Shown: positions 14,605-50,255, numbered from the stretch's first letter. The stretch: DNA of 64,000 nt from IMGVR_UViG_3300028558_000016:372001-436000; one strand, 5' to 3'. Numbers and translations: made by a program. Notes: generated by a model not told the origin, from the letters alone.

Positions 14605-14691
14605 GGGTAAGTTGCCGTAGTGGCCGAACGGTCCAGACTGTTAATCTGGTGAGAGCAATCTCCGTCGTGGGTTCGAATCCCACCTCGCCCT
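14605..14691 (+). tRNA. tRNA-Asn(GTT), long variable arm
   Basis: CCAGA-CTGTTAA-TCTGG; variable arm GAGAGCAATCTC. Confidence 0.8.
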
Positions 14692-14698
14692 CAACTTT

Positions 14699-15506: not shown

Positions 15507-15590
15507 TGTACAGTATGCAAATTGGCGAAGCGAACAGATTTTGGATCTGTTGGAGTAATCCCGCTGCAGGTTCGAGCCCTGCCTGTATAA
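15507..15590 (+). tRNA. tRNA-Gln(TTG), long variable arm
   Basis: ACAGA-TTTTGGA-TCTGT; TGTACAG/CTGTATA. Confidence 0.78.
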
Positions 15591-15604
15591 CTAAAATTAA
15601 AAAC

Positions 15605-16781: not shown

Positions 16782-18341
16782 ATGTCAAGAAAAGTAAGAG
16801 TAAGATTTGCCCCGTCACCGACAGGGCCACTTCACATGGGTGGCGTAAGAACCGCCTTGTATAATTATCTCTTTGCTAAAAAGCACGGAGGTGATTTCAT
16901 TTTAAGAATAGAAGATACAGACAAAGACAGATTTGTTCCTGGCGCAGAAGCTTACATCATTGAAGCTTTGAATTGGTGTGGAATAACTCCTAACGAAGGA
17001 ATAGATGGAAATTCTGTTCTTGATACATACAAGCAATCAAAAAGAAATGAGGCTGGAATATACAATCCTTATGTTGCAAAATTAATTGCAGAAGGAAATG
17101 CATATTACGCATTTGATACTAAAGAAGATCTTGACGCATTGAGAACTTCTGTTTCTGAAAAAAGAAAAGCAGGATTAAAAGTAAGAGAATTCGCTTATGG
17201 TGTTTTCACAAGAGAATTATTGAACAACAGCTTGAACATGACTGCCGATGAATTGAAAGCAAGATTGGATGCTGGAATTCCTTATGTCATTCGTTTGAAG
17301 ATGCCTAAGGAAGTTGAAATTAAATTCGTTGATTTGATCAGAGGTGCTGTCACTGTAAAAAGTCACACCATCGATGATAAGGTTATATTCAAGAGCGATG
17401 GACTTCCAACATACCATTTGGCAAATGTTGTTGACGATCACTTGATGGACATTTCTCACGTCATTAGAGGTGAGGAGTGGTTGCCATCGGCACCGTTGCA
17501 CGTCATGCTATACAAGATGTTAGGTTGGGAAGATACCATGCCTGAGTTTGCACACCTTCCTTTGATCATGGGACCAAGCGGTAAATTGAGCAAGAGAGAT
17601 GGAGATACATTGGGATTTCCTGTATATCCTTTAAAGTATACAGATCCAAAAACATCTGAGACATCGAGCGGTTACCGTGAGAATGGTTTCTTGCCAAGTG
17701 CATTCAATAACATGGTTGCATTTCTTGGTTGGAATCCAGGTGGCACCGATGAGGTATTCACAATGGATGAAATGATCGATAAATTCTCTTTGGATAGAGT
17801 AGGAAAATCAGGAGCTAAATTCGATTTGAAGAAGGCTAATTGGTTCAATCACCAACACATGATGAAGTCTGATAATGATGACTTGGCAAAATTATGGATC
17901 AGCAATGGAGGATTATACAATGGAGCCATGGGTGTTTGGTCTACTGATGCGACAAAACAACGTGTTGATTCATTTGAATATGTTTCAAAGGTTTGTGGAT
18001 TGCTTAAAGAGAAGGTTTCTAACATCAATGATTTTTGGAATTCTGGAAAATATTTCTTTATTGCGCCTGAGCCAAGTCTTGGAACAGAACATTCTTCGTT
18101 CTTGGCAGAAGTAATTGCAAACATAACTAAGGATGAAGTGTTCAATCACGATTCTTTAAGAGCTGTGTTTGATGCTTCAGTTAAGGCAACCGGTGTTGAC
18201 GCAAGAGAGGCTGGAATGGTTTTAAGGATTGCTGTAACAGGAATGAAAGTTGGTCCACCTTTATTTGATGCAATGGAATTGATAGGTAAAAATGAATCAA
18301 TAAACAGAATAGCATCTAACGTGGTAGTCAATCATGAGTAA
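16782..18341 (+). CDS. gltX: glutamyl-tRNA synthetase
   Basis: RFAPSPTGPLHMGG, RIEDTD, HVIRGEEW, KLSKR. Confidence 0.96.
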   Translation: MSRKVRVRFAPSPTGPLHMGGVRTALYNYLFAKKHGGDFILRIEDTDKDRFVPGAEAYIIEALNWCGITPNEGIDGNSVLDTYKQSKRNEAGIYNPYVAKLIAEGNAYYAFDTKEDLDALRTSVSEKRKAGLKVREFAYGVFTRELLNNSLNMTADELKARLDAGIPYVIRLKMPKEVEIKFVDLIRGAVTVKSHTIDDKVIFKSDGLPTYHLANVVDDHLMDISHVIRGEEWLPSAPLHVMLYKMLGWEDTMPEFAHLPLIMGPSGKLSKRDGDTLGFPVYPLKYTDPKTSETSSGYRENGFLPSAFNNMVAFLGWNPGGTDEVFTMDEMIDKFSLDRVGKSGAKFDLKKANWFNHQHMMKSDNDDLAKLWISNGGLYNGAMGVWSTDATKQRVDSFEYVSKVCGLLKEKVSNINDFWNSGKYFFIAPEPSLGTEHSSFLAEVIANITKDEVFNHDSLRAVFDASVKATGVDAREAGMVLRIAVTGMKVGPPLFDAMELIGKNESINRIASNVVVNHE

Positions 18342-19398
18342 TATGCCAATAGGAATCCAAGCAATGGGTCCAGCCGAAGTAATAACGGAAATGTTTCTTC
18401 GTCCTGGATCCATTTCTGCTTATAGAGAGCAGATGGATCTGCTTGATAAAAACAAGGAACATATTTCTGTTCACGATGGATTTTCTATAATAACTTTCTG
18501 GGAACCTGCAACGAAGGCTTTCAATGCCGGCTGGAAGATGAGAGTTGTTTATGGCGAAGTAAAAGAAAAGAAATATTTTGTAAAAGATAATTGGAAAAAC
18601 AAAACAGTTTATTCTGGTGCAAGGCCTGAATGCGAAAAATACGTTCAGGGAAATAACACATATCAATTAAATTATTCTCGTTTGACAATCGAAATTAATT
18701 CAACTCTCGATGATAAGTTGGATGAATTAAAAAAGATTATTTCTGACTCAACAAAGCCAGATGAGAACGAATTGCGTTTTGCAAAGGCTACATCTAATTG
18801 GATCAAGGGTCCTGTCATGGGTTGGTTGAATGATAACAAGCTTGATTTCACCACTCGTTCTAAACCATCTCATCATAAATCATTAGTCACTGGAAATCTT
18901 TTCGACTATGAAAAATATTCTGCCATTGATGAAGAGAAGTGGTGGCCTAAAGATTCTCCTGATGCAAAACTTTATTTGCCTCTTCCTAAAGACGAATATC
19001 CTTACACAGTCGTGTATTCTGAAGAGGAGAGTAATTTTCCAATAAAATCTGAACATTTAAAAGAATTAATAAGCTTGGTTGAATTTACAGATCTTATTAG
19101 TTTCTCTACTGCTTCCAAAACTGTTTTTCCTGAGATGATCAAAAATCCAGATGAAAAACCTTGGGATATAATTCAAAGATTAAATTTGATGCAAAGCAAT
19201 GATGATGATGCCATCAAACAAATGGCCAAAGATGCTTTAGCAAAATATCCCGACAAGGTTGAAGAATATAGGAAAGGAAAGAAGGGAGTTCTCAGCCTGT
19301 TCATGGGCGAAGTAATGAAAGCCGGTAAAGGAAAAGTAAATCCGCAAATGGCTTCAGAAATAGTAAAAAATCTTTTGGAAGAAAAGGAGGGAGCATAA
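18334..19398 (+). CDS. protein with C-terminal GatB/YqeY domain
   Basis: VEEYRKGKKGVLSLFMGEVMKAGKGKVNP. Confidence 0.8.
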   Translation: MSNMPIGIQAMGPAEVITEMFLRPGSISAYREQMDLLDKNKEHISVHDGFSIITFWEPATKAFNAGWKMRVVYGEVKEKKYFVKDNWKNKTVYSGARPECEKYVQGNNTYQLNYSRLTIEINSTLDDKLDELKKIISDSTKPDENELRFAKATSNWIKGPVMGWLNDNKLDFTTRSKPSHHKSLVTGNLFDYEKYSAIDEEKWWPKDSPDAKLYLPLPKDEYPYTVVYSEEESNFPIKSEHLKELISLVEFTDLISFSTASKTVFPEMIKNPDEKPWDIIQRLNLMQSNDDDAIKQMAKDALAKYPDKVEEYRKGKKGVLSLFMGEVMKAGKGKVNPQMASEIVKNLLEEKEGA

Positions 19399-21531: not shown

Positions 21532-21789
21532 ATGAAAGATGAAAGTAAAATAACAACTCAGCAATTCAAATTTATTTCTGAATTGCTTTGGGGTGGAGTT
21601 CCCGTTGACCGGGTACAAGCTGAAGAGTCTGCGATGTTCAAAGCGAACGCGCCAAAAATATTAGAGGAATATCCTCTATTGGATAAATCATTTTTTGAAA
21701 AACATAGTAAAAACAAAGGTTATGAAATTGTCAAAAGTAAAAATATACAAGATGAACAAGGTAGGCAAGGAGAAATTGTCGACGGCTGA
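21532..21789 (+). CDS. hypothetical protein
   Basis: ORF track. Confidence 0.5.
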   Translation: MKDESKITTQQFKFISELLWGGVPVDRVQAEESAMFKANAPKILEEYPLLDKSFFEKHSKNKGYEIVKSKNIQDEQGRQGEIVDG

Positions 21790-22852
21790 TTTATTGGAAA
21801 GAACCGGCTACATAAAACAAGTCTCATCTGGATTGTTCGTTCAGATGCACTTTATGAAGTTGGTGATGAATAACATCGAAAAGATCGTTAGAGAAGAACT
21901 AAACAAAATAAGCGCCTTGGAAATTGGATTGAACCAGTTACAAGGCGCTGAAGTTTGGAAGCAAACCGGTCGCTATAATGATTATGGCGCTGAGATGTTC
22001 AAGCTCAAGGATCGTTCAGATAAGGAGATGGTGTTCACAGGAACAAACGAAGAACTCGTGACTGTTGTTGCAAGAGAATATGTGGAGTCATATAGAGATT
22101 TGTCTTTCACATTCTATCAGATAAACAATAAGTTCAGAGATGAAATTCGCTGTAACACAGGTCTGATTAGATGTAAAGAGTTTCTCATGATGGATGCATA
22201 TTCATTTCATGTTAACAAAGAAGATCTCGAAATTAGATATAATGAAATAAGAAATTGTTATATTGCCATATTCGATCGACTCAAACTGAAATACAGAATT
22301 GAAACTGCAGATTCAGGAGAGATTGGCGGATCTGTTTCAGAGGAATTCATAGTTGAAACAAGTGATGGAGATATTGAGATAGGACACATTTTCCAATTAG
22401 ACACAAAATACTCGTCCAAGCTTGAAGCACAATTCATAGATGAAAAAGGCGAAAAGCAGGACATAGTGATGGGATGTTATGGAATAGGAATTTCTCGATT
22501 GGCCCAGGTTCTTGCAGACATTAACAGAGATGGAAATAATCTCAATTGGTCAAGAGAACTTGCAGCATACAGTCATGCAATCATTGTGGCAGATGTGAGG
22601 AACGAAGAACAAATGAGGATTGCTGAAAAGATATACGATGAATTGAAAAGAAAAAAGAAGAACGTATATCTCGATGACAGAAATCTTCGTGTTGGCGAAA
22701 AGCTTACCGAAGCTGACATCCTTGGTTCTGCGAATAAAATTTTAATAGGTAAAAATATAAGTGAAAATAATTTTGAGGTGAAGAAAAATTCAAACGATGC
22801 ATGGGAAAAAATGTCCATGGAAAGCTTGGATTACTTCTTGGAACTTCAGTAA
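21722..22852 (+). CDS. proS: prolyl-tRNA synthetase lacking the INS editing domain
   Basis: WKQTGRY, TNEE, KFRDEIR, EFLMMDAYSF, EIGHIFQL, MGCYGIGISR, anticodon-binding domain. Confidence 0.93.
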   Translation: MKLSKVKIYKMNKVGKEKLSTADLLERTGYIKQVSSGLFVQMHFMKLVMNNIEKIVREELNKISALEIGLNQLQGAEVWKQTGRYNDYGAEMFKLKDRSDKEMVFTGTNEELVTVVAREYVESYRDLSFTFYQINNKFRDEIRCNTGLIRCKEFLMMDAYSFHVNKEDLEIRYNEIRNCYIAIFDRLKLKYRIETADSGEIGGSVSEEFIVETSDGDIEIGHIFQLDTKYSSKLEAQFIDEKGEKQDIVMGCYGIGISRLAQVLADINRDGNNLNWSRELAAYSHAIIVADVRNEEQMRIAEKIYDELKRKKKNVYLDDRNLRVGEKLTEADILGSANKILIGKNISENNFEVKKNSNDAWEKMSMESLDYFLELQ

Positions 22853-38773: not shown

Positions 38774-40069
38774 ATGAAAAAAACAGTAATCATTATTGGA
38801 GGTGGAACAGTATCTCACGTCAGATCACATCTCGCCTTAGCTGCAGTTGCGTATGGAACTACAGCAAGACATTTAAAAGCAATTTGCGAAAGCCATTCGG
38901 ATAAATTGGACGTCAAATTACATCTAACCAAAATGGCCGAAGGTTGGGCAACAAAGGATGGAATGGAAACAGCCGAAGATGTTGCAGCCTTAGTTCAAAA
39001 ATTAAAAGCTGATGTGAATGTGAAGATCATATTCTTTAATCCCGCCTTGGTGGATTTTTCTGGAGAAGTTACCGGACATGCTGCTTATAATACTAATGAC
39101 TCTTTCACTAAAATTGAAAGCGGAAAGTATTCTAAACGTTTAAACAGCAGAACTGGAAAAACAAGCATTGAGTTGTCTCCAAAAGAAAAGATCATAAAAG
39201 AAATACGCAACGGAAGAAAAGACATCTTCCTTGTTGGGTTTAAAACAACATGTGGTGCAACACAAGATGAACAATACATAGCAGGATTAAATCTTTTGAA
39301 AGAATCGAGTTGCAATCTTGTTCTTGCCAATGATACCAAAACGAGATTGAACATGATCATAACTCCAGAAGAAGCGAGATACCATGTAACAAAAAACAGG
39401 GATGAAGTTTTGGAGATGCTTGTTGAAATGGCATACTTAAGAAGCCATTTGTCTTTCACTCATAGCACAGTGATTGCCGGTGAAGCTATTCCATGGAAAT
39501 CAGAATTAGTTCCAGACTCATTAAGAAAAGCAGTTGATTATTGCATTGAGAAAGGTGCATACAAAGAATTCAGAGGTTCTACTGTTGGTCACTTTGCTTG
39601 CAAGATAGATGAGAAAACCTTCTTGACGTCTAAACGTAAAACAAACTTCAATGACCTTGAGAAGAATGGTCTTGTTAAAGTTGTCGTTAATGGCAAGGAC
39701 ACTGTTATTGCGTATGGAGCAAAACCTTCCGTTGGTGGACAATCACAGAGAATAATATTCTCTGAACATAATGATTATGATTGCATCGTACATTTCCATT
39801 GTCCTAAAAAAATAAATTCACCAGTTCCTTCTGTATCACAAAGAGAATATGAATGTGGAAGCCATGAGTGTGGCAAAAACACTTCTAATGGTTTGAAACG
39901 CTTTGGTAATCTTTCTGCTGTTATGTTAGACAATCACGGGCCAAACATTGTATTCAATCATACTATTGATCCGCAGGAAGTAATTGATTTCATTGAAGCC
40001 AATTTTGACCTTGCTGGAAAAACCGGTGGTCCAGTTAAACTTGAACAAACATTACAAACTTCGTTATGA
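38774..40069 (+). CDS. CoaB-like domain fused to class II aldolase/adducin-like domain
   Basis: GGGT, LVGFKTT, LVLAND; KPS, IVHFH, NHG. Confidence 0.7.
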   Translation: MKKTVIIIGGGTVSHVRSHLALAAVAYGTTARHLKAICESHSDKLDVKLHLTKMAEGWATKDGMETAEDVAALVQKLKADVNVKIIFFNPALVDFSGEVTGHAAYNTNDSFTKIESGKYSKRLNSRTGKTSIELSPKEKIIKEIRNGRKDIFLVGFKTTCGATQDEQYIAGLNLLKESSCNLVLANDTKTRLNMIITPEEARYHVTKNRDEVLEMLVEMAYLRSHLSFTHSTVIAGEAIPWKSELVPDSLRKAVDYCIEKGAYKEFRGSTVGHFACKIDEKTFLTSKRKTNFNDLEKNGLVKVVVNGKDTVIAYGAKPSVGGQSQRIIFSEHNDYDCIVHFHCPKKINSPVPSVSQREYECGSHECGKNTSNGLKRFGNLSAVMLDNHGPNIVFNHTIDPQEVIDFIEANFDLAGKTGGPVKLEQTLQTSL

Positions 40070-41914: not shown

Positions 41915-41997
41915 ACGTCGGTGTCCGAGCGGTCAAAGGTAGCGGTCTCCAAAACCGCGGAGTTTCTCCATCGTGGGTTCGAATCCTACCCGGCGTG
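41915..41997 (+). tRNA. tRNA-Trp(CCA), long variable arm
   Basis: GCGGT-CTCCAAA-ACCGC; G73; GGAGTTTCTCC arm. Confidence 0.88.
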
Positions 41998-42018
41998 CAA
42001 AAATTAAAAGAAGAAAAC

Positions 42019-42373: not shown

Positions 42374-42463
42374 GGTGCAGGTATCCAAGGGGTTGAAGGG
42401 ACCAGGCTGTGGACCTGGTTGAAGCGAAAGCTGAACACGCGAGTTCGAATCTCGTCTTGCACC
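42374..42463 (+). tRNA. tRNA-His(GTG), long variable arm
   Basis: G-1:C73; CCAGG-CTGTGGA-CCTGG; AGCGAAAGCT arm. Confidence 0.85.
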
Positions 42464-42468
42464 CACAT

Positions 42469-42543
42469 GTGGATTGTAGCTCAATGGTAGAGCGCTGGTT
42501 TGTGGAACCAGATATGCGGGTTCGATCCCCGTCTTTCCAACCA
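42469..42543 (+). tRNA. tRNA-His(GTG)
   Basis: CTGGT-TTGTGGA-ACCAG; G-1, A73; two U.U mismatches in the acceptor stem. Confidence 0.8.
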
Positions 42544-42552
42544 AAAGAAGCA

Positions 42553-43185
42553 ATGATGAAAGAGTTAAAGTTAGATAGCACGTACAAAGGAACGAGAATT
42601 CTTGTAGGAAACGAGAAGCGTGGAATGATCAATGACATGGTCATGATTTTATTGAATCAAGGCTTCACTGAGATTTCCATTCCGATCATTCAGTTGCAAG
42701 AAACATTTGCAGGAAAGGTTGGAGAAGAAAATAACAATCTAATGTTCAATTTTAAAGATCGTGGAGAAAGGAATGTTTGCTTGGCTCCTGAATACACAGC
42801 AGTGATTCAACAATTGGCAAAGACGAAATACAAACAAGAAAAGGACGTAAAGCTTTTCTATGTGCAAGAATGTTTTAGAGGAGAAAAGCCTCAAGCAGGA
42901 AGATACAGACAGTTTACTCAATTTGGAGTTGAAATTTTAAATCCAAAGAAAGAAACTATGGAAGGATTAAAAGAATTAGCCGTCAGCCTTTTGTCCGGTT
43001 ATGATTTCAAATTCAACGTCAACAGTGATGTGACGAGAGGTTTGGATTATTACAAGGACGGAAAAGGATTTGAGATCACATGCGATGAGCTTGGATCAAG
43101 CAAACAGATTTGTGGTGGAGGTTCTTATGAAGGTGGAATGGGTTTTGCAATTGGAATTGATAGGATATTAAAAACACAGTCATGA
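42553..43185 (+). CDS. hisS: minimal histidyl-tRNA synthetase (catalytic core only)
   Basis: LAPEYTA, FRGEKPQAGRYRQFTQFGVE, RGLDYY, GGGSY, GFAIGIDRI. Confidence 0.9.
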   Translation: MMKELKLDSTYKGTRILVGNEKRGMINDMVMILLNQGFTEISIPIIQLQETFAGKVGEENNNLMFNFKDRGERNVCLAPEYTAVIQQLAKTKYKQEKDVKLFYVQECFRGEKPQAGRYRQFTQFGVEILNPKKETMEGLKELAVSLLSGYDFKFNVNSDVTRGLDYYKDGKGFEITCDELGSSKQICGGGSYEGGMGFAIGIDRILKTQS

Positions 43186-43913
43186 AATATTTAGTAGGAA
43201 TACAGCCAACAGGAAAGATCCATATTGGAAACTATATGGGTTGCTTAGCAAAGGGGTTGAGATACCAGGAGCAGGGACACGAAGTAACGTTTCTCATTGC
43301 CAACTATCACAGCATGACGACAGACTCATACTCTGATGTGACTGAGAAGGAATTGAGAATGCTTGGATGCAAGAACATTGTGCACCAGACTCCGGCTTAC
43401 ACTGAATTGTTCTTCAAGCTTTGTTGCAAGATGAACCTTGGAGTTTTGCAGAAGATGCCTCAGTACAAGGATAAAAAGGAAAGTGTTGATTTCGATATGG
43501 GGATTCTTTTATATCCAGTTCTAATGGCAGCAGACATCATCATGAATGATCCTGATGTTGTGTTGGTTGGAAGAGACCAGGTTCCACACATGGAATTGAC
43601 GAACGATATTGCAAAAAGAGTTGGAGTAACAAAGAGGTTTGAATACGAGCTTGGGGATGTTGAAAAGGTGATGTCGTTAATTGATCCAACAATGAAGATG
43701 TCAAAGTCATCTGGCGAAGCTCACGTGCTTTACCTATTTGACGAGGATTACAGTAACAAATTGAAAAGAGCAAACATGAACGGAGAAGGACTCATTAATA
43801 TACAAAAGATAGGAGACTTCTTTGGAATAGAAAGAAACGATATGAATTCCATATACAAAGAAAATATAGCAATAAAACTGTCATCGGTGTTCGGCACCGT
43901 CCCGGTGACTTAA
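43182..43913 (+). CDS. trpS: compact tryptophanyl-tRNA synthetase
   Basis: GIQPTGKIHIGNY, YPVLMAADI, VGRDQ, KMSKS. Confidence 0.93.
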   Translation: MKYLVGIQPTGKIHIGNYMGCLAKGLRYQEQGHEVTFLIANYHSMTTDSYSDVTEKELRMLGCKNIVHQTPAYTELFFKLCCKMNLGVLQKMPQYKDKKESVDFDMGILLYPVLMAADIIMNDPDVVLVGRDQVPHMELTNDIAKRVGVTKRFEYELGDVEKVMSLIDPTMKMSKSSGEAHVLYLFDEDYSNKLKRANMNGEGLINIQKIGDFFGIERNDMNSIYKENIAIKLSSVFGTVPVT

Positions 43914-43935
43914 ATAAAACCGGTGCCGTCCAAAT

Positions 43936-44020
43936 GGGCGTGTACCGGTGGAATCTTATACATTCTATACCCGTAGTCTGGTCGTTGAAAACGGGGGTTC
44001 AAATCCCTCCACGCCTACCA
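43936..44020 (+). ncRNA. D-arm-less rearranged tRNA-like RNA, anticodon TAT (Ile)
   Basis: GGGCGTG/CACGCCT+ACCA; GGAAT-CTTATAC-ATTCT directly after the acceptor strand. Confidence 0.6.
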
Positions 44021-44052
44021 AATTTAGCTTCATGAATTATGATATATAGTTC

Positions 44053-44589
44053 ATGAAGCATTTACAGACATATCAGCAGCTTAACGAGAGCATGATAGAT
44101 TCCAATTTGAAGAAGGAATTTGCATTTACCCTAAAACAAATGGATGAAATTTCCAATGCAATACTCAATGCAAAAGATTTCAAGAACAGGGTAAAGCTTA
44201 TGAAGAAAGAAAACCCAGATATTGGAAAAGCTATGGGAGATTACAAAGAATATCTTGATCTCGCCACCAAGGTGCAAAAAATAGTAAAACAAATTAGATC
44301 AAAAGGACTTTCTTCAGACAGAAGAAAAGCGACTAAACAATTGAGAGCCATCCAGGGGTTTTCTGGTACACTTAAAACAGTTTTCGATAATTTGAATAAG
44401 TTTGATAAAAAAACCAAAAAGGGTTTTGAAAGCAACGAAGGAATAGCAACCATCATTGGAAATACATTAAGAAATATATTGACTGGTCAGTTCATAGTTA
44501 ACATATTAAAAACCATAAAAGGAAATTTAATGGATTCACAAGCAGAACTAACTACTGTGCAAGATGTATTTGATATAAAAGATTATTAA
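44053..44589 (+). CDS. hypothetical protein with capsid-targeting-like N-terminus
   Basis: MKHLQTYQQLNES; GATATATAG upstream. Confidence 0.6.
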   Translation: MKHLQTYQQLNESMIDSNLKKEFAFTLKQMDEISNAILNAKDFKNRVKLMKKENPDIGKAMGDYKEYLDLATKVQKIVKQIRSKGLSSDRRKATKQLRAIQGFSGTLKTVFDNLNKFDKKTKKGFESNEGIATIIGNTLRNILTGQFIVNILKTIKGNLMDSQAELTTVQDVFDIKDY

Positions 44590-44590
44590 T

Positions 44591-44830
44591 ATGCAAAAGA
44601 TTAAGGACGCTTTAAAATGGATGGTTTGTACCAAGCTTGGATGGTTGATAATATCATTCTTATGGATTGGTGTGTTCATGATAATAAACGATAACATAGA
44701 ATCTGGATGGGCCTTTTGGGTTGCAATTCCAGGATTCGCATACATCATAGGTTTATTCCTTGTCATGATGTTTTATGCGGTAAAGAATACGATAGGAGAC
44801 ATAAAAGAAAATAGAAATGAAAAATCTTAA
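44591..44830 (+). CDS. small membrane protein
   Basis: two TM segments. Confidence 0.6.
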   Translation: MQKIKDALKWMVCTKLGWLIISFLWIGVFMIINDNIESGWAFWVAIPGFAYIIGLFLVMMFYAVKNTIGDIKENRNEKS

Positions 44831-45113
44831 AAAGTTCGGTGAGTTAAACGAGGGTGGATTAGGTTATGAAAACAACAAAACGCTTCCTCCATCTGGGACA
44901 CACATAAAATATGTTGCTGACACAACAGATCCAAAGACCAAAAAAATTCTCAAGATTATTTGGAATTCATGGGACGAGGCAAAAAGGAAACAGATGCTTA
45001 ACAAAATGGGACACAGCGAAAAGTATTTTGATGCTTCTTTTGAAGACCTGACAGGAGAGATCCAAGGAAAGATCGTAATGCTTGATGCCTCATTGCCAGA
45101 AAACAAGCGATAA
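44817..45113 (+). CDS. hypothetical protein with capsid-targeting-like N-terminus
   Basis: MKNLKKFGELNEG. Confidence 0.6.
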   Translation: MKNLKKFGELNEGGLGYENNKTLPPSGTHIKYVADTTDPKTKKILKIIWNSWDEAKRKQMLNKMGHSEKYFDASFEDLTGEIQGKIVMLDASLPENKR

Positions 45114-45115
45114 AA

Positions 45116-45190
45116 TAAATTTTTTAGTTTCAAATATAATACCTATATTTGTAAAAGATTAAGAAACAAAGAAAACCGCAAGGTATATAA
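45116..45190 (+). promoter_or_regulatory. conserved operon promoter block
   Basis: TTTTTTAGTTTCAAATATAATACCTATATTTG...GAAACAAA...GGTATATAAG. Confidence 0.65.
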
Positions 45191-45197
45191 GATACAA

Positions 45198-45281
45198 ATG
45201 ATGAATACAGTAAATATTACCCGAATTATTAGGATTAGACGCAGATCAGCGACTCGCCTGGGTAGTATTATTTTATCATGA
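45198..45281 (+). CDS. attenuator leader peptide, Ile/Arg-rich (27 aa)
   Basis: MMNTVNITRIIRIRRRSATRLGSIILS*. Confidence 0.85.
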   Translation: MMNTVNITRIIRIRRRSATRLGSIILS

Positions 45282-45345
45282 AAGTTTTAAGGATTTAGAA
45301 AACTATGAATGGAATAAGCCCAGGACGAAAGTTCTGGGCTTTTTT
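45257..45345 (+). terminator. attenuator: antiterminator and intrinsic terminator
   Basis: CCTGGGT(45257-63) can pair GCCCAGG(45318-24) of AAGCCCAGGAC-GAAA-GTTCTGGGCTT-TTTT. Confidence 0.85.
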
Positions 45346-45395
45346 CATTTTAAAAATATCGAAAATGAAATGGTTTAAGAAATTACAGGAAATAA

Positions 45396-45479
45396 CGGCA
45401 CGTACTCAGACCATCCTGATAAGATGGATAACTTGTAGCGGTGTTGCAAACGTGGGTTCAAATCCCTCCGTGCCGACCA
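45396..45479 (+). ncRNA. D-arm-less rearranged tRNA-like RNA, anticodon GAT (Ile)
   Basis: CGGCACG/CGTGCCG+ACCA; CCATC-CTGATAA-GATGG 8 nt after the acceptor strand. Confidence 0.65.
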
Positions 45480-45760
45480 TGAAAAATATGTTGTATAAAA
45501 CCGCAAGAAGGTCGTTGTCAAAAAAGACAAACAGACATTTGAGACAAACCACGTTTCTCTACGAGATGTGTGGAAATGATTTTCAAAAGCTGTTAAAGGT
45601 GGAAGAGAGATTGAAAAATTATTTTCTCTTTTATTGTCCAGGCGATCCTGAAGAAGTGGAAAAAGTTTTGGCATTGCCTGAAAAATTTTTATTGAACGAT
45701 AAGAAGTGGCAAGATGGATCAAAATATTTTTGCTTAGAAGAATTTTACGACGGAATGTAG
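45479..45760 (+). CDS. hypothetical protein
   Basis: MKNMLYKT...; stop TAG lies inside the next tRNA. Confidence 0.55.
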   Translation: MKNMLYKTARRSLSKKTNRHLRQTTFLYEMCGNDFQKLLKVEERLKNYFLFYCPGDPEEVEKVLALPEKFLLNDKKWQDGSKYFCLEEFYDGM

Positions 45761-45824
45761 CTCAGTTGGTTAGAGCACCCGCCTGATACGCGGTAGGTCG
45801 GCAGTTCGAATCTGCCCATTCCGA
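45751..45824 (+). tRNA. tRNA-Ile(GAT)
   Basis: CCGC-CTGATAC-GCGG; CGGAATG/CATTCCG. Confidence 0.9.
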
Positions 45825-45827
45825 CAG

Positions 45828-45973
45828 ATGTCCTTAGCTCAGTGGTTAGAGTATTATGCTGATAAAAGGTTTTAGATCTTGTAATGGAAAAATATCACGG
45901 CTCATAACCGTGGTACCAAAACAAAAATTTAAAATGCACATAAGGGTCGGTGGTTCGAATCCATCAGGACATG
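45828..45973 (+). tRNA. tRNA (GAT) with about 73-nt insert carrying a nested CAT anticodon arm
   Basis: ATGTCCT/AGGACAT; TTATG-CTGATA[insert with CACGG-CTCATAA-CCGTG]A-CATAA. Confidence 0.65.
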
Positions 45974-45982
45974 CATAAAAAT

Positions 45983-46056
45983 GCCCGCGTAGCTCAACTG
46001 GATAGAGCACCTGACTACGGATCAGGAGGTTTAGAGTTCGAATCTCTACGTGGGTA
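45983..46056 (+). tRNA. tRNA-Arg(ACG)
   Basis: CCTGA-CTACGGA-TCAGG. Confidence 0.92.
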
Positions 46057-46060
46057 CATT

Positions 46061-46134
46061 GGTTTTGTAGCTCAATTGGATAGAGCAATTCCGTCCTAAG
46101 GAAAAGGTTATAGGTTCGAGTCCTATCAAGATCA
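46061..46134 (+). tRNA. tRNA-Arg(CCT)
   Basis: TTCC-GTCCTAA-GGAA. Confidence 0.85.
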
Positions 46135-46139
46135 CAAAT

Positions 46140-46212
46140 GCCTGCGTAGCTCAGTGGACAGAGCGCCGGTCTTCGGAACCGGGCGTCGGGAGTTCGAATC
46201 TCTCCGTGGGTA
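46140..46212 (+). tRNA. tRNA-Arg(TCG)
   Basis: CCGGT-CTTCGGA-ACCGG. Confidence 0.9.
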
Positions 46213-46236
46213 CTGAAGTAAAATGGAATTAAATAT

Positions 46237-46326
46237 GCCCGTGTAGCCGAGGAAGTTTTCTAAACTTTTATCCGTAATTGGAGCTGCGTCTCACGACTAA
46301 TGGGGGTTCGAATCCCTCCACGGGTA
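46237..46326 (+). ncRNA. D-arm-less rearranged tRNA-like RNA, anticodon TCT (Arg)
   Basis: GCCCGTG/CACGGGT; GAAGT-TTTCTAA-ACTTT right after the acceptor strand. Confidence 0.62.
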
Positions 46327-46341
46327 CTTAAAATTAAAGTT

Positions 46342-47505
46342 ATGAAAATTGATATTGATAAAATAAAACAGATCCCCAAAGAGATTTCGGAAGAATTTGG
46401 GATGTGCGTCTATGGACCAATCTCAGATGAGATTAAGGCATGGATGGAATTCCATGGTATGCAATCGCAAAACATGGGAAATTATACAAACATCTATACA
46501 GATAAAAACATTATTGATCTGTTCAATAAACCAGAACCATTTGAATACATCGATGGGTTCAGTCCAAACCTAAACAAGAATCTTCACATTGGACACTTCT
46601 CAAATTTAGTTCTTGCAAAGGCTTTCGTCTCTCTTGGAATAGCAAAGAAGACTGTGGCAATATTGGGAGACACGTTAGAAGGGGATGTTTCAAAGGAAGA
46701 TGCGTTGAACAACTACAATGAGATATGTGAGAAATTCTCATACCCCGTAGATAAGATGTTCATGGCTTCTGAAATGGAATCTGATTACAACCTCGTGGAT
46801 GGTGTTCATGAATATGAAGGAACCAAAGTGTTCTATCTTGATACGCCATTAGTTGGAATCAAAAGCGATGGGTCAACAACATATTTCTATCAGGACGTTG
46901 CATTGGCACAAAAATTAAATGCTCCAACATTATATCTTACAGGAAGCGAACAGAACGGACATTTCAACAGCTTAAAGGAAATGTTTCCTAAAATAAAGCA
47001 CATTGGACTTGGACTTGTAAAAGCAAAAGGAGGAAAGATGTCAAGCAGACTCGGAAATGTTATTTGGATGCAAGATGTCATCGATGAAATGATGAGCAAC
47101 TTTCAAGACGAAAAAGTGTGCTATAATGTTTTTGCAGGATTTATTTTGAAATCAACTCCTAAGTCTGAAAAGAACATAGACATATATCAATTGGACAATC
47201 CATTGAATTCACCTGGATTGTACTTAAGCTATACGTTAGCAAAACTAAAAAGCGCTGGAGTGAAATGTGAAGGAAAAACATTCACCTCTCAAGATCTTCA
47301 ATTCAAATACATGAAGGCCTTGAACTCTCTTTCTCCAAATATTTTGCTTGAAGGTTTAATTGATCATGCAAAGAAGATAAGCGGTTTATACATCACTCAC
47401 AAGATAAAAGATAATGCGGTGAACCAGTCCATGTTTGAAATATTGGGTTCAGATTTATTATTAGGAATGAGCCTCCTGGGTTTATTTGATGTTGACAAGG
47501 TTTAA
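46342..47505 (+). CDS. argS: compact arginyl-tRNA synthetase
   Basis: FSPNLNKNLHIGH, KSDGSTTYFYQDVA, EQNGHF, KMSSRLGN, YLSYTLAK. Confidence 0.9.
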   Translation: MKIDIDKIKQIPKEISEEFGMCVYGPISDEIKAWMEFHGMQSQNMGNYTNIYTDKNIIDLFNKPEPFEYIDGFSPNLNKNLHIGHFSNLVLAKAFVSLGIAKKTVAILGDTLEGDVSKEDALNNYNEICEKFSYPVDKMFMASEMESDYNLVDGVHEYEGTKVFYLDTPLVGIKSDGSTTYFYQDVALAQKLNAPTLYLTGSEQNGHFNSLKEMFPKIKHIGLGLVKAKGGKMSSRLGNVIWMQDVIDEMMSNFQDEKVCYNVFAGFILKSTPKSEKNIDIYQLDNPLNSPGLYLSYTLAKLKSAGVKCEGKTFTSQDLQFKYMKALNSLSPNILLEGLIDHAKKISGLYITHKIKDNAVNQSMFEILGSDLLLGMSLLGLFDVDKV

Positions 47506-47562: not shown

Positions 47563-48519
47563 ATGGCAACCAAAACATCTAAAGCCGCAACAGGAACCGT
47601 GAAAGCACGAACAGCAGGAAGAAAAGCAACGACATCAACAAAGACACCAATGAAAGCAGAAACTACATTGGAACCAAAAAAGGCCTCGAAGATTAAAATA
47701 AGTGGAAAAGAAGTTACATTGAACGGGTATTTTAAAATTGAATTGGGAACCTTTTCGATTTTAAAGCACAACATCCGAAACAACATAAGCACTCTTTTAA
47801 TAGGTCCAACAGGACTTGGAAAAACAGATGTCGCAGTTAACATTGCGTCTGTGCTCGATGTTCCTATAACCATATTTGATATGGGAACGATGACTGACCC
47901 CATCATGGGACTTGTTGGAACTCACGTCATAGAGGTTAAAGATGGAAAAACATATTCTGAATTCAAGAAAAGCAGATTCTCTGACGTCATCCAAAAACCA
48001 GGAATAGTTTTATTGGATGAGGTCAATCGTGCTGCATCAGCCGCTAACAACTTATTATTTCCTTGTTTAGATTTCAGAAGAGAGCTTCCAATGGAATATT
48101 CGTTTGGAGATACTAAGCCAATTCCAATTCATCCTAAATGTGTTTTCTTTGCAACGGCAAATATAGGATCTCAGTATACCGGAACTCACAAGCTTGACAG
48201 AGCATTAATCGATAGGTTCATGATTATTGCAGTTGATAGTCTCAACACTCAACAAATTATGTCCACGTTAGAAGTGACTCATTCTAAATTAAGTGAGACT
48301 GACAGAAAAAAGATTGTTGACATTTACAACAAGATAAACAAAGAGCATGACGATTTCAAAATAGGTTTCAATTTGTCAATACGACATTTGAAAACTGTTG
48401 CGACACTTGTGCAAAACAAGTTCACGATATATGATGCGTATTATGCAATATGCAAAGGACTTGGTGGACCAGAAGGATTAAAAGCTATTGAATCGATCTT
48501 AAGCACCTCTAAAAAATGA
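47563..48519 (+). CDS. MoxR/CbbQ-like AAA+ ATPase
   Basis: GPTGLGKT, LLDEVNR, ATAN, LDRALIDRF. Confidence 0.9.
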   Translation: MATKTSKAATGTVKARTAGRKATTSTKTPMKAETTLEPKKASKIKISGKEVTLNGYFKIELGTFSILKHNIRNNISTLLIGPTGLGKTDVAVNIASVLDVPITIFDMGTMTDPIMGLVGTHVIEVKDGKTYSEFKKSRFSDVIQKPGIVLLDEVNRAASAANNLLFPCLDFRRELPMEYSFGDTKPIPIHPKCVFFATANIGSQYTGTHKLDRALIDRFMIIAVDSLNTQQIMSTLEVTHSKLSETDRKKIVDIYNKINKEHDDFKIGFNLSIRHLKTVATLVQNKFTIYDAYYAICKGLGGPEGLKAIESILSTSKK

Positions 48520-50255
48520 TAGGATTTGATATTACAGGAAAGAAATCAAAAAGCGTAACTAAATGGGAAGACTCATTGTTTGGAGGCTATTACAGAACTG
48601 TAATGGATTACCCGGACGTGAAAGTTCACAGCAACGTTGATTTTGATTTTGGAACCATAGCGTATGGAAGTTACTTTTTAAAAGAGAAGATCTTGAAGAT
48701 TTTCTTATCTAAGGTTAAAACACACGGTTACACTACAAAGCTTTTGGATAACTGTACTGTCGAAAGAAAACGAGATGCATGGGGTGATGAAATCACTGAG
48801 GCCACCGTAGATAATAACAGCAAGCTCAGTACAATAAGAGCTGTGATTGCAAGAGAACCAGAGTTTGCTCCTATGTTTTCCCATTATATGAAGTTTATAA
48901 TGGACACCAGAATTTACTTTTACAAAAGCAATTCTAAAGCTCCAAGCAATGGGACTGGTTCTTCAGACGACGATTTTGAAGAATTTAAGGATGAAAACGA
49001 AAATGACGAATCATCCGGAAAATCAGAAGAAGAAAAATCTAAAAACGGAAACTCCGGTAAAGGCAAAGAGAAAGAGAAAGAAGAAGAGAAACCAGAAGAA
49101 ACCAAGGATGAAAGCTCTGGTGATGGAGAAGGAGAAGAAAAAGAGGAGCCAGAAAATTCCGAATCTGATGGTTCAAATTCTGAAGAAGAAAAGGAAGAAG
49201 AAAAAGGAGATGGAGAAGGAGAAGGAGAAGAAAAATCTCCAGAGGATAAGGCGTTGGAAGATAAATTAGAAAAAGAACTTGAGAAAAGGAAACAGGAAAT
49301 AGAAGAACGAGAACAGAAGGCAAAACAAAAACCTGTCAAAAAATTAACTCAGGCTGAAATAAATCAAATCCAAGAATCTTTCAAAAAGGCCATTCAAAGT
49401 ATAGTTGAAGAGTCCATTGTTCATAGCTACATTTCAGGATTTAAAAAACCTGTTAAAGTAATTTTTGAACGACCAAATGTTAGAGACACTGAGTTTAATT
49501 ACGAAGACAAAAGAATAGCCGAGAATCTCGTTAAGATGCTCGACATTTCATTTGACCCAGCGAAAGAAATAGTAAAGAACTTGCGTCTTGGCAAATTGGA
49601 CATATCAAAGATTGCAGAGGTTCCAGCCGGAAATATTGCCATATACAAGCAGGATGTGGAAAATCAAACGACTAAACCATTTAGCATTGTAATATTATGT
49701 GATGAGTCAGGAAGCATGGGTTCTGGACATGAATACAAAGGACGTGGCGATAAATTGTATTCGCAATATAGAATAGTCAAACAATTGTACTTGGCATTTT
49801 CTGACATCATTCCACAGAATAAACTCTATGTGTATGGACATTCGGGATCAGAAGAACCTGAGCTTTATGTTTATCAAGATTCTTATCGTCCAAATTTTAC
49901 CAAGACGATTGATCACATGATCCACAACCATAATCACCATTCCAATTATGATGGACCTGCAATAGAAGAAGTTTACAATCAGGTAAGAAATTCCACCGAT
50001 GATAGAATAATTTTTATTTGTCTTTCTGATGGTCAACCTGCTGGAAATAATTATGGAGGTCACGATGATCAATTGAAAATGAAACAAATAATTGAAAAAT
50101 GTAAGAGGGATGAATTCGTGACTGTTGGTGTTGGAATTCAATATTTCACCGTAAAGAATCTTTATCAATACAGCACGGTGGTAACTGATCTGGATGAAAT
50201 GGCTAAGAAAGTGAGTCACATAGTCAATCACGTGGTCAAAAGTGAGTTTCAATAA
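48516..50255 (+). CDS. VWA-domain partner protein with acidic linker
   Basis: DESGSM MIDAS, LSDGQP; E/K/G-rich linker. Confidence 0.85.
   Translation: MIGFDITGKKSKSVTKWEDSLFGGYYRTVMDYPDVKVHSNVDFDFGTIAYGSYFLKEKILKIFLSKVKTHGYTTKLLDNCTVERKRDAWGDEITEATVDNNSKLSTIRAVIAREPEFAPMFSHYMKFIMDTRIYFYKSNSKAPSNGTGSSDDDFEEFKDENENDESSGKSEEEKSKNGNSGKGKEKEKEEEKPEETKDESSGDGEGEEKEEPENSESDGSNSEEEKEEEKGDGEGEGEEKSPEDKALEDKLEKELEKRKQEIEEREQKAKQKPVKKLTQAEINQIQESFKKAIQSIVEESIVHSYISGFKKPVKVIFERPNVRDTEFNYEDKRIAENLVKMLDISFDPAKEIVKNLRLGKLDISKIAEVPAGNIAIYKQDVENQTTKPFSIVILCDESGSMGSGHEYKGRGDKLYSQYRIVKQLYLAFSDIIPQNKLYVYGHSGSEEPELYVYQDSYRPNFTKTIDHMIHNHNHHSNYDGPAIEEVYNQVRNSTDDRIIFICLSDGQPAGNNYGGHDDQLKMKQIIEKCKRDEFVTVGVGIQYFTVKNLYQYSTVVTDLDEMAKKVSHIVNHVVKSEFQ

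What the first reader, a model, noticed from the sequence alone, without database searches (positions are those of the whole stretch)
42553..47505. Minimal synthetases: about 210-aa HisRS without anticodon domain, 243-aa TrpRS, 387-aa ArgRS
HisRS keeps motifs 2 and 3 and RGLDYY but ends right after motif 3. TrpRS and ArgRS are much shorter than cellular enzymes, and ProRS (21722) lacks its editing insert. Catalytic motifs are intact and the cognate tRNAs are adjacent. Acceptor-end recognition (G-1 is encoded in both tRNA-His) could suffice, making these natural urzyme-like enzymes.
Basis: partly seen in the sequence, partly recalled or inferred. Interest (0 to 1): 0.66.

Follow-up and report, generated by a model that had tools for sequence, protein, structure and literature searches.

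The report
Streamlined tRNA synthetases in huge phage
A 482-kb soil phage carries unusually small but strongly conserved versions of the enzymes that load histidine, tryptophan and arginine onto tRNA; the 210-residue histidine enzyme has lost the part that normally reads the anticodon, so it is a candidate natural "minimal" synthetase that can now be tested.

Summary
Window 42553-43185, 43182-43913 and 46342-47505 encode 210-aa HisRS-like, 243-aa TrpRS-like and 387-aa ArgRS-like proteins, each beside cognate tRNA genes, in a 482-kb phage genome from rhizosphere metagenomes.

They are not fragments or assembly or genetic-code artefacts. Each belongs to a family of about 700-1,700 length-matched proteins on huge-phage contigs. 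dN/dS against a syntenic relative is 0.04-0.12. Independent metagenome contigs reproduce the ORF junctions exactly.

- **Mini-HisRS:** a complete class II catalytic core with motifs 1-3 and RGLDYY invariant. It lacks both the roughly 100-aa insertion domain and the C-terminal anticodon-binding domain. It is predicted to homodimerise.
- **TrpRS:** keeps HIGN, GxDQ and KMSKS. About half of its C-terminal helical domain is gone.
- **ArgRS:** not truncated in kind. Its model aligns end to end with yeast ArgRS, so all three modules are kept in compact form.

"Urzyme-like" is therefore too strong, but anticodon-independent, acceptor-end (G-1) recognition by the HisRS is the best-supported mechanism. 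Activity is untested. I found no paper describing this architecture. A cultured Sinorhizobium phage carries a 196-aa homologue, which makes experiments feasible.

The parts
41915..41998 (+). tRNA-Trp(CCA), 84 nt, with a long variable arm, A1:U72 and G73
   Evidence: ARAGORN and Rfam; fold
42374..42464 (+). tRNA-His(GUG), 90 nt, with a long variable arm; encoded G-1 (42374) pairs with C73 to give an 8-bp acceptor stem
   Evidence: long tRNA-His recurs in related phages with different V-arm stems
42469..42543 (+). Second tRNA-His(GUG), 74 nt; G at -1, A73, two U.U mismatches in the acceptor stem, CCA encoded
42553..43185 (+). Mini-HisRS, 210 aa: a class II catalytic core without the insertion domain or the anticodon-binding domain
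   Evidence: NCBIfam hisS 2.2e-41 in two stretches; PDB mapping; AF2 pLDDT 93 and Foldseek TMq 0.83 to E. coli HisRS; 72 invariant columns in 32 homologues; dN/dS 0.12; dimer score 0.88 against 0.01 for the best control
43182..43913 (+). Mini-TrpRS, 243 aa: Rossmann fold with HIGN, GxDQ and KMSKS; the C-terminal helical domain is cut to about 67 aa after KMSKS
   Evidence: trpS 5.7e-38, profile 6-224 of 328; PDB mapping 5-209 to 6-232 of a 328-aa TrpRS; family alignment; dN/dS 0.043
43936..44017 (+). tRNA-like RNA with a reduced D-arm, anticodon loop CUUAUAC (UAU), a long variable region and encoded CCA
   Evidence: Rfam tRNA 33.8 bits; 81 of 82 nt identical in an 88%-identical relative; fold
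45983..46213 (+). Three tRNA-Arg genes (ACG, CCU, UCG) upstream of the ArgRS
46237..46326 (+). tRNA-like RNA with a reduced D-arm, anticodon loop UUUCUAA (UCU) and a roughly 30-nt variable region, ending 15 nt before the ArgRS start
   Evidence: Rfam tRNA 34.7 bits; 89 of 90 nt identical in the relative
46342..47505 (+). Compact ArgRS, 387 aa: short N-terminal domain (about 1-62), Rossmann core with HIGH (H82-H85) and KMSSR (232-236), helical anticodon-binding domain
   Evidence: argS 5e-13; AF2 pLDDT 92; VIA Z 29.4 to 1f7u over model 1-387; family alignment; dN/dS 0.064
21695..22852 (+).
   Evidence: two-stretch matches to 559-579-aa ProRS

Best explanation
These are working, phage-specific, size-reduced aminoacyl-tRNA synthetases of a huge (482-kb) phage. 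With the roughly 55 phage tRNAs and the other phage synthetases, they would keep tRNA(His), tRNA(Trp) and tRNA(Arg) charged during infection.

**Mini-HisRS.** It is a homodimeric class II catalytic core that activates histidine with the canonical residues. It has neither an insertion domain nor an anticodon-binding domain. I infer that it selects tRNA(His) from the acceptor end only, through the extra G-1 and the discriminator base read by the motif 2 loop.

**Mini-TrpRS.** It uses the normal class I chemistry with a shortened helical domain.

**ArgRS.** It is a trimmed enzyme that keeps all three modules.

Shown here: the gene models, conservation, purifying selection, domain content, predicted folds and predicted dimer. 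Inferred: catalytic activity, tRNA specificity and the role in infection.
For: - **Real genes.** The families are large and length-constant. HisRS: 1,728 hits, the best 120 mostly 204-220 aa, and IMG/VR loci mostly 196-229 aa, with three shorter (145-152 aa) and two incomplete, with TAA/TAG/TGA stops. TrpRS: 1,636 hits, mostly about 240 aa. ArgRS: 728 hits of about 390 aa. Contigs reach 726 kb.
- **Selection.** dN/dS is 0.12, 0.043 and 0.064 against a syntenic relative.
- **Assembly.** Contigs from four other metagenome runs cover the ORF junctions with no differences.
- **Catalytic residues.** For HisRS, E80/T82, R109, E111, R117, R119, Q123, E127, R162-Y167, Y192 and R204 are invariant, and most of these (E80-Y192) align with E. 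coli E83/T85, R113, E115, R121, R123, Q127, E131, R259-Y264 and Y288. For TrpRS, HIGN, D132-Q133 and KMSKS are conserved. For ArgRS, H82/G84/H85, the Y183-D185 block and K232 are invariant; M233-S235 are nearly invariant, and position 236 is R or S among members.
- **Folds.** HisRS has pLDDT 93 and its best matches are HisRS catalytic domains, TMq 0.83. ArgRS has pLDDT 92 and Z 29.4 to yeast ArgRS.
- **Dimer.** ipSAE is 0.88 against a best control of 0.01. That mark was reached by 20 of 30 solved homodimers and 1 of 23 monomers. The interface runs through residues 14-20 and 39-48, around the motif 1 proline P44.
- **tRNA context.** Cognate tRNAs are adjacent. All 17 tRNA-His genes found near mini-HisRS genes have G at -1.
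- **No substitutes in the genome.** There is no second HisRS, TrpRS or ArgRS and no stand-alone HisRS-type anticodon domain.
- **Family history.** Mini-HisRS forms one split against full-length HisRS, SH-aLRT 100.
- **Precedent.** A viral mini-AlaRS that targets only the acceptor stem is active (PMC10036535).
Against: - No activity, expression or structure data exist. No RNA run holds the locus.
- All three score below NCBIfam's curated cut-offs: 142 against 287, 131 against 177, and 48 against 262 bits.
- The HisB motif reads GGG[S/E]Y rather than GGRYD.
- From memory, an engineered E. coli HisRS catalytic fragment was monomeric and a poor aminoacylation catalyst (Augustine & Francklyn 1997). 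Loss of the domains may therefore cost activity unless it is compensated.
- The dimer pass may only reflect likeness to solved HisRS dimers.
- Adjacency to tRNA-His holds in only 14 of 65 related loci within 6 kb.
Confidence: 0.68

Rival explanations
1. Synthetase-like paralogues with a non-translational job. The cores would activate the amino acid but transfer it to something other than tRNA's 3' end (a carrier protein, a modified base as GluQRS does, a metabolite or DNA), or would act as regulators as HisZ does.
For: Truncated aaRS cores that lost their anticodon-binding domains often have such roles (GluQRS/YadB and HisZ, cited in PMC9437257). All three proteins fall below the curated equivalog cut-offs. 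Other class-II-core-like proteins of about 185-222 aa and unknown function exist in cultured phages.
Against: - hisS outscores hisZ, 142 against 80 bits.
- The ATP- and histidine-binding residues and the motif 2 loop are invariant.
- The genome has no hisG.
- The genes sit in tRNA arrays beside cognate tRNAs whose identity elements are intact.
- The ArgRS keeps an anticodon-binding domain.
Confidence: 0.14
2. Split enzymes. The catalytic cores need a separately encoded RNA-binding partner, from the phage or the host, that supplies anticodon or elbow recognition in trans.
For: The missing domains must otherwise be compensated for. Huge phages encode many unknown proteins. The GatB/YqeY-like protein at 18334-19398 shows that stand-alone tRNA-binding modules exist in this window.
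Against: No HisRS-type anticodon domain occurs elsewhere in the genome; the only hit lies inside the ProRS. No neighbouring gene is conserved across 47 mini-HisRS loci; the most widespread occurs in 6. A partner of unrelated fold encoded elsewhere is not excluded.
Confidence: 0.1
3. Interference proteins. The mini-HisRS keeps the dimer interface so that it can form heterodimers with the host HisRS and so alter or poison host charging.
For: The predicted interface is the canonical motif 1 interface.
Against: A pure poison would not need every catalytic residue to be invariant across a family that diverges to about 32-36% identity. This was not tested directly.
Confidence: 0.04
4. Decaying gene fragments, or artefacts of assembly, gene calling or an alternative genetic code.
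For: The sizes are short, and the genome holds three tRNA(CUA) genes that could suppress TAG.
Against: dN/dS is 0.04-0.12. There are thousands of length-matched homologues. Independent contigs are identical. The stops are TGA, TAA and TAA, each followed soon by a further in-frame stop.
Confidence: 0.02

Closest known systems
Bacterial class IIa histidyl-tRNA synthetase (e.g. E. coli HisRS, PDB 1KMM/1KMN)
   Same: The catalytic-domain fold matches (TMq 0.83). Motifs 1, 2 and 3, the RGLDYY histidine loop and the motif 2 loop residues are present, and a homodimer through motif 1 is predicted.
   Different: It lacks the roughly 100-aa insertion domain and the whole C-terminal anticodon-binding domain, so it has about half the length (210 against about 420 aa). 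HisB reads GGG[S/E]Y. It scores below the NCBIfam cut-off.
HisZ (ATP phosphoribosyltransferase regulatory subunit)
   Same: It is a HisRS paralogue without the anticodon-binding domain.
   Different: As I recall it, HisZ keeps the insertion domain, has lost its catalytic residues and works with HisG. Here the catalytic residues are invariant, the insertion domain is absent and the genome has no hisG.
Tupanvirus mini-AlaRS (PMC10036535)
   Same: It is a virus-encoded synthetase that lost accessory tRNA-binding domains, and it was shown to charge tRNA through the acceptor stem alone.
   Different: It differs in amino acid and domain set, comes from a eukaryotic giant virus and is much larger. 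It has been tested by experiment, whereas the phage enzymes have not.
CysRS* lacking the anticodon-binding domain, paired with selC* tRNA(Cys) in Desulfobacterales (PMC5389517)
   Same: It is a natural aaRS copy without an anticodon-binding domain, encoded beside an unusual dedicated tRNA.
   Different: It is a class I bacterial enzyme and a second copy beside a normal CysRS. Here the host's enzyme is the normal copy and the family is specific to phages.
Designed and genomic aaRS urzymes (HisCA, TrpAC, LeuAC, GlyCA; PMC11602164, PMC9026127)
   Same: They are reduced catalytic cores that keep amino-acid activation and rely on the acceptor stem.
   Different: Urzymes are excerpts of about 80-130 aa, mostly designed. 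The phage proteins have 210-387 aa, are complete catalytic domains and are maintained by natural selection.
PylRS catalytic domains without the N-terminal domain (e.g. M. alvus PylRS, about 275 aa)
   Same: They are compact class II cores that ignore the anticodon. They are the second-best structural and sequence matches.
   Different: Their amino-acid pocket and tRNA differ. The mini-HisRS is clearly of HisRS descent.
Canonical ArgRS (yeast 1F7U, E. coli 5YYM) and bacterial TrpRS (B. stearothermophilus 1I6K)
   Same: The ArgRS shares the same three modules in the same order, with Z 29.4. The TrpRS shares the Rossmann fold and signature motifs.
   Different: The ArgRS is about 190-220 aa shorter through trimmed insertions and a half-size N-terminal domain. 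The TrpRS is about 85 aa shorter, mostly in the C-terminal helical domain.

Membership tests
Histidyl-tRNA synthetase (class IIa) | Class II catalytic fold with motif 2 (fRxE...R) and motif 3 (GxGxGxxR) arginines | tested here: met
   R109, E111 and R204 are invariant in 32 homologues. The fold matches HisRS with TMq 0.83.
Histidyl-tRNA synthetase (class IIa) | Histidine-specific motifs HisA (RGLDYY) and HisB (GGRYD) | tested here: inconclusive
   RGLDYY is invariant. HisB reads GGG-x-Y, with S, E or another residue in place of the Arg, while the cultured phage homologue has GGGRY.
Histidyl-tRNA synthetase (class IIa) | Motif 1 homodimer | tested here: met
   This is a prediction only. ipSAE is 0.88 against a best control of 0.01, and the interface includes residues 39-48 with P44.
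Histidyl-tRNA synthetase (class IIa) | Insertion domain between motif 2 and HisA | tested here: not met
   The query jumps from residue 137 to 146 where solved HisRS runs from 140 to 241.
Histidyl-tRNA synthetase (class IIa) | C-terminal alpha/beta anticodon-binding domain | tested here: not met
   The protein ends 6 residues after motif 3. The only HisRS-type anticodon-domain hit in the genome lies inside the ProRS.
Histidyl-tRNA synthetase (class IIa) | NCBIfam TIGR00442 equivalog cut-off | tested here: not met
   142.2 bits against a cut-off of 286.75.
Histidyl-tRNA synthetase (class IIa) | Histidylation of tRNA(His) | not testable with these tools
   This needs ATP-PPi exchange and aminoacylation assays.
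HisZ | Degenerate catalytic residues and partnership with HisG | tested here: not met
   The catalytic residues are invariant. hisZ scores 80 bits against a cut-off of 272. The genome has no hisG.
Tryptophanyl-tRNA synthetase (class Ic) | HIGH-type and KMSKS signatures and the GxDQ aspartate | tested here: met
   HIGN 14-17, D132-Q133 and KMSKS 172-176 are present. Their core residues (G16, N17, D132, Q133, KMSKS) are invariant in 30 homologues, and position 14 is H in most, T or S in a few.
Tryptophanyl-tRNA synthetase (class Ic) | Complete C-terminal helical (anticodon-binding) domain | tested here: not met
   The alignment to a 328-aa TrpRS ends at residue 229-232. Only about 35 further residues follow, against about 96 in the solved enzyme. 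No 3D model was made.
Tryptophanyl-tRNA synthetase (class Ic) | NCBIfam TIGR00233 cut-off | tested here: not met
   131 bits against a cut-off of 176.75.
Arginyl-tRNA synthetase (class Ia) | N-terminal domain, Rossmann core with HIGH, and C-terminal helical anticodon-binding domain | tested here: met
   Model residues 1-387 align to 1f7u residues 17-607, Z 29.4, 365 residues aligned. The N-terminal part aligns with most ArgRS chains and with no CysRS or MetRS chain. H82/G84/H85 are invariant.
Arginyl-tRNA synthetase (class Ia) | NCBIfam TIGR00456 cut-off | tested here: not met
   48.2 bits against a cut-off of 261.65, and no PDB hit by sequence.
aaRS urzyme | Minimal core of about 120-130 aa without insertion or CP1 and without an anticodon-binding domain | tested here: not met
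   The sizes are 210, 243 and 387 aa. The TrpRS aligns through the Rossmann-fold region that includes CP1, and the ArgRS keeps its anticodon-binding domain.

The most novel reading that the evidence does not exclude
The roughly 208-aa HisRS and roughly 240-aa TrpRS may be the smallest natural stand-alone aminoacyl-tRNA synthetases. On this reading the HisRS enforces histidine identity purely through the acceptor-stem 'operational code' (G-1/N73). With the phage's own unusual tRNAs, they would form a phage-private charging system partly insulated from the host. Those tRNAs include long-variable-arm tRNA-His, Trp, Asn, Lys, Glu, Gln and Met, and D-arm-poor tRNA-like RNAs beside the TrpRS and ArgRS genes.
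Probability: 0.3. Interest if true: 0.85.

Novelty: new variant of a known kind. Interest (0 to 1): 0.62.

Why it matters
If active, these enzymes show how far natural selection can strip a modern synthetase while keeping it useful.

- **Evolution.** They would be a natural test of the idea that acceptor-stem recognition alone can specify an amino acid, which is the operational RNA code and urzyme debate.
- **Engineering.** They would offer very compact scaffolds for engineered translation systems.
- **Phage biology.** The finding refines the picture of huge-phage biology. The synthetases reported in these phages (PMC7162821) are not simply copies of host genes. They include phage-restricted, monophyletic, miniaturised families.
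- **Tractability.** A homologue in a cultured Sinorhizobium phage makes the question open to experiment.

Tried and rejected
- **Genetic-code artefact: rejected.** The stops are TGA, TAA and TAA, each followed soon by another in-frame stop. The family uses all three stop codons.
- **Assembly error: rejected.** Contigs from four other runs are identical over the junctions.
- **HisZ role: disfavoured**.
- **Missing HisRS domains encoded elsewhere: none found.** The only anticodon-domain hit lies inside the ProRS. A weak ArgRS N-terminal-like hit at G000:C1:168860-169099 (E 0.004, with a stop inside) was judged to be noise.
- **Conserved neighbour as a trans partner: none** in 47 loci.
- **HisRS-TrpRS gene pairing as a conserved unit: no.** TrpRS lies within 6 kb in only 5 related loci.
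- **Long-arm tRNAs existing exactly for the amino acids with a phage synthetase: does not hold.** Long-arm tRNA-Lys exists but no LysRS does. ProRS exists but no long-arm tRNA-Pro does.
- **Expression evidence: none available.** No RNA run holds the stretch, so this is no evidence of silence.
- **PHROGs:** no family for the mini-HisRS.
- **Literature:** ten searches found no paper describing this architecture. Subscription journals are largely outside that library.
- **TrpRS and ArgRS homologues in the cultured phage Phosso: not found**.

Full report
**Context.** The window is bases 372001-436000 of a single-contig virus record of 482,156 bp, rated complete by CheckV. Its nearest DNA relatives are 634-735-kb 'uncultured phage' records. 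From memory, these are the largest genomes reported in the huge-phage survey PMC7162821. The stretch occurs almost word for word in several rhizosphere metagenomes. The genome encodes 55 tRNAs by ARAGORN. It also encodes at least nine synthetase-like genes:
- In the window: TyrRS, GluRS, ProRS, MetRS, HisRS, TrpRS and ArgRS.
- Just upstream of the window: a 300-aa GlyRS-like core followed by IF-3.
- At genome position 126613-127827: a 425-aa Asx-type enzyme.

**The observation.** The HisRS-like protein (42553-43185, 210 aa) matches solved HisRS in two blocks only. Residues 26-137 align with 23-140, and residues 146-196 align with 241-293 of S. aureus HisRS. The protein stops six residues after the motif 3 arginine.

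The TrpRS-like protein (43182-43913, 243 aa) aligns from residue 5 to about 209 with residues 6-232 of a 328-aa TrpRS. About 67 residues follow KMSKS, where the canonical enzyme has about 130.

The ArgRS-like protein (46342-47505, 387 aa) has no PDB hit by sequence and only a local argS match.

**Are they real genes?** Yes, on several independent lines of evidence.
- **Family size and length.** Length-restricted searches gave 1,728, 1,636 and 728 homologues. The best 120 of each cluster mostly at about 204-220, 237-250 and 389-400 aa. They sit on contigs of up to 726 kb.
- **Unrestricted search.** An exhaustive search without a length limit placed about 50 clusters of roughly 210-aa, single-stretch proteins, down to about 32-36% identity, ahead of or among full-length HisRS of about 420 aa that match in two stretches.
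- **Related loci.** In 65 IMG/VR loci with a usable match (of 66 returned), 60 of the 63 complete ORFs have 196-229 aa; three are shorter (145-152 aa) and two are incomplete. They end in TAA (50), TAG (7) or TGA (7).
- **Selection.** Against a syntenic contig with 88% nucleotide identity, dN/dS is 0.12 (His), 0.043 (Trp) and 0.064 (Arg).
- **Assembly.** Contigs from four other metagenome runs cover the HisRS/TrpRS overlap, the TrpRS stop and both ArgRS ends with no differences or indels.
- **Genetic code.** None of the three genes ends in TAG, so the genome's three tRNA(CUA) genes are irrelevant to their length.

**Domain content and catalytic residues: HisRS.** Thirty-two mini-HisRS sequences share 72 invariant columns. 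Through the alignment to E. coli HisRS, the invariant residues correspond as follows.

| Mini-HisRS | E. coli HisRS |
|---|---|
| E80 / T82 | E83 / T85 |
| R109, E111 | R113, E115 |
| K112 | R116 |
| Q114 | Q118 |
| R117, R119 | R121, R123 |
| Q123, E127 | Q127, E131 |
| R162-Y167 | R259-Y264 |
| Y192 | Y288 |
| R204 | the motif 3 arginine, placed by motif only: it lies beyond the E. coli alignment |

K112 is the only listed position that is not invariant in the family. The residue that aligns with E. coli R287 is S or E in the family. The AlphaFold2 model (pLDDT 93) matches HisRS catalytic domains best, with TMq 0.83. Compact PylRS cores come next.

A two-copy prediction passed its controls. 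The score was 0.88 against a best control of 0.01. That mark was reached by 20 of 30 solved homodimers and 1 of 23 monomers. The partner's pLDDT was at least 87, and the runs agreed in at least 98% of contacts. The interface runs through residues 14-20 and 39-48 around the motif 1 proline. This shows likeness to the class II dimer, not proof of binding.

**Domain content and catalytic residues: TrpRS and ArgRS.** In the mini-TrpRS family, the core residues of the HIGN, GxDQ (D132-Q133) and KMSKS signatures are invariant.

The ArgRS model (pLDDT 92) aligns over residues 1-387 with yeast ArgRS residues 17-607: Z 29.4, rmsd 3.6 A, 365 residues aligned. CysRS and MetRS align only from residue 59-67 onward and score lower, with Z of 23.5 or less. 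The ArgRS is thus a compacted but complete enzyme with three parts:
- a half-size N-terminal domain;
- a core with HIGH (H82-H85), the Y183-D185 block and KMSSR;
- a helical anticodon-binding domain.

**tRNA context.** tRNA-Trp and two tRNA-His genes lie directly upstream of the HisRS-TrpRS pair, and three tRNA-Arg genes lie upstream of the ArgRS. The 90-nt tRNA-His has an encoded G-1 that pairs with C73, giving an 8-bp acceptor stem. The 74-nt copy has G at -1, A73 and two U.U mismatches. All 17 tRNA-His genes found within 6 kb of mini-HisRS genes, here and in related phages, have G at -1; 14 have C73 and 3 have A73. The tRNA-Trp has A1:U72 and G73. From memory, these are the bacterial Trp identity elements.

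**Mechanism.** The best-supported reading is that these are active synthetases. The HisRS has no anticodon-binding module of its own. The genome holds no stand-alone HisRS-type anticodon domain, and no neighbouring gene is conserved across 47 loci. It keeps the motif 2 loop residues that, as I recall from the literature, read G-1:C73 in E. coli HisRS. I therefore infer anticodon-independent, acceptor-end recognition. That inference fits the classical finding, cited from memory (Francklyn & Schimmel 1990), that a G-1:C73 microhelix is a HisRS substrate. It also fits the experimentally active, acceptor-stem-only mini-AlaRS of Tupanvirus (PMC10036535). A further parallel is the CysRS* without an anticodon-binding domain that is paired with a special tRNA(Cys) (PMC5389517).

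The steps that remain inferred are catalysis, tRNA specificity and the benefit to the phage, which would plausibly be to sustain charging of phage tRNAs during infection.

**Rivals.**
- **HisZ-like or other non-translational role.** This is disfavoured by the profile scores (hisS 142 bits against hisZ 80), the invariant catalytic residues, the absence of hisG and the tRNA context.
- **Trans-acting partner of unrelated fold.** Not excluded.
- **Poisoning of the host HisRS by heterodimerisation.** Conceivable, but it does not explain the invariant active site.
- **Pseudogenes or artefacts.** Excluded.

**Distribution and origin.** Mini-HisRS sequences form one split against 70 full-length HisRS representatives (SH-aLRT 100, quick IQ-TREE search). 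Among one genome for each of 185,579 prokaryotic species, only two MAG contigs carry a close mini-HisRS. They come from a Saccharibacteria bin and an Omnitrophota bin, and I suspect they are mis-binned phage DNA. All other hits are full-length enzymes at 42% identity or less. Atlas clusters of the mini-TrpRS are 92-97% viral. Among deposited phage genomes, the mini-HisRS occurs in two of the metagenomic giant genomes. At 42% identity it also occurs as an annotated 196-aa 'histidyl-tRNA synthetase' with tRNA-His 276 nt upstream in the cultured 469-kb Sinorhizobium phage Phosso.

[quoted passage not shown] Ten full-text searches found no description of them. JGI annotations already name these proteins HisRS, TrpRS and ArgRS. 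So the genes are known, while the miniaturised, phage-restricted architecture appears undescribed. I class it as a new variant of a known kind.

**Limits.**
- There are no biochemical or expression data.
- The dimer and fold results are predictions.
- The literature library omits most subscription journals.

Noticed in passing
window 41915-41998, 42375-42464, 14605-14692, 15507-15591; genome-wide G000:C1 5778-5869, 6974-7059, 7373-7464, 124757-124843: The phage encodes long-variable-arm (84-92 nt) tRNAs for Trp, His, Asn, Gln, Met, Lys and Glu, usually next to a normal-length copy. Such arms are normally confined to Leu, Ser and Tyr. The long tRNA-His recurs in related phages with different V-arm stem sequences, which suggests a conserved structure.
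   Followed up: partly
window 43936-44017 and 46237-46326: Two tRNA-like RNAs, found by Rfam only, have a reduced D-arm and a long variable region. Their anticodon loops give UAU and UCU. One lies just after the TrpRS stop and the other ends 15 nt before the ArgRS start. Each differs by a single base from its copy in a relative whose flanks are only about 88% identical, so both are under strong constraint. They could be unusual tRNAs or tRNA-mimic regulators.
   Followed up: partly
window 45828-45973: A tRNA gene (anticodon loop CUGAUA, GAU) carries a 74-nt insert in the anticodon loop. It is also present in the relative at L076 4461-4607.
   Followed up: no
window 2278-2351; G000:C1 358020-358092 and 368276-368349: The genome has three tRNA genes with anticodon CUA, which are amber suppressors that ARAGORN labels Pyl. 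The ORFs in the window read through normally under the standard code, and the three synthetase genes do not end in TAG.
   Followed up: partly
G000:C1:364549-365451 (L003:1069-1971), about 6.5 kb upstream of the window: A 300-aa GlyRS-like class II core is a fourth reduced synthetase; normal dimeric GlyRS has about 450-565 aa. An IF-3 gene follows it.
   Followed up: partly
window 18334-19398: A 354-aa protein has a C-terminal GatB/YqeY-like tRNA-binding domain. It lies directly after the GluRS and near tRNA-Gln genes, and may be part of a Glu/Gln charging route.
   Followed up: no
BFVD hits to the mini-HisRS model: Cultured and uncultured phages encode other class-II-core-like proteins of about 185-222 aa and unknown function, e.g. 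K7QJG2 of Escherichia phage phAPEC8. They match with TM 0.6-0.7 at 11-19% identity.
   Followed up: no
L160 (Sinorhizobium phage Phosso, PV764938.1) 3746-4686: A cultured 469-kb phage has tRNA-His followed by a 196-aa annotated histidyl-tRNA synthetase that is 42% identical to the window's protein. This offers a tractable experimental system. No TrpRS or ArgRS homologues were found in it.
   Followed up: partly
window 38774-40069 and 47563-50255: Two other genes in the window drew my attention. One is a 431-aa protein with a weak N-terminal match to phosphopantothenate-cysteine ligase. The other is an AAA+ (GvpN/CobS-like) ATPase followed by a 579-aa acidic protein, directly after the ArgRS.
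   Followed up: no
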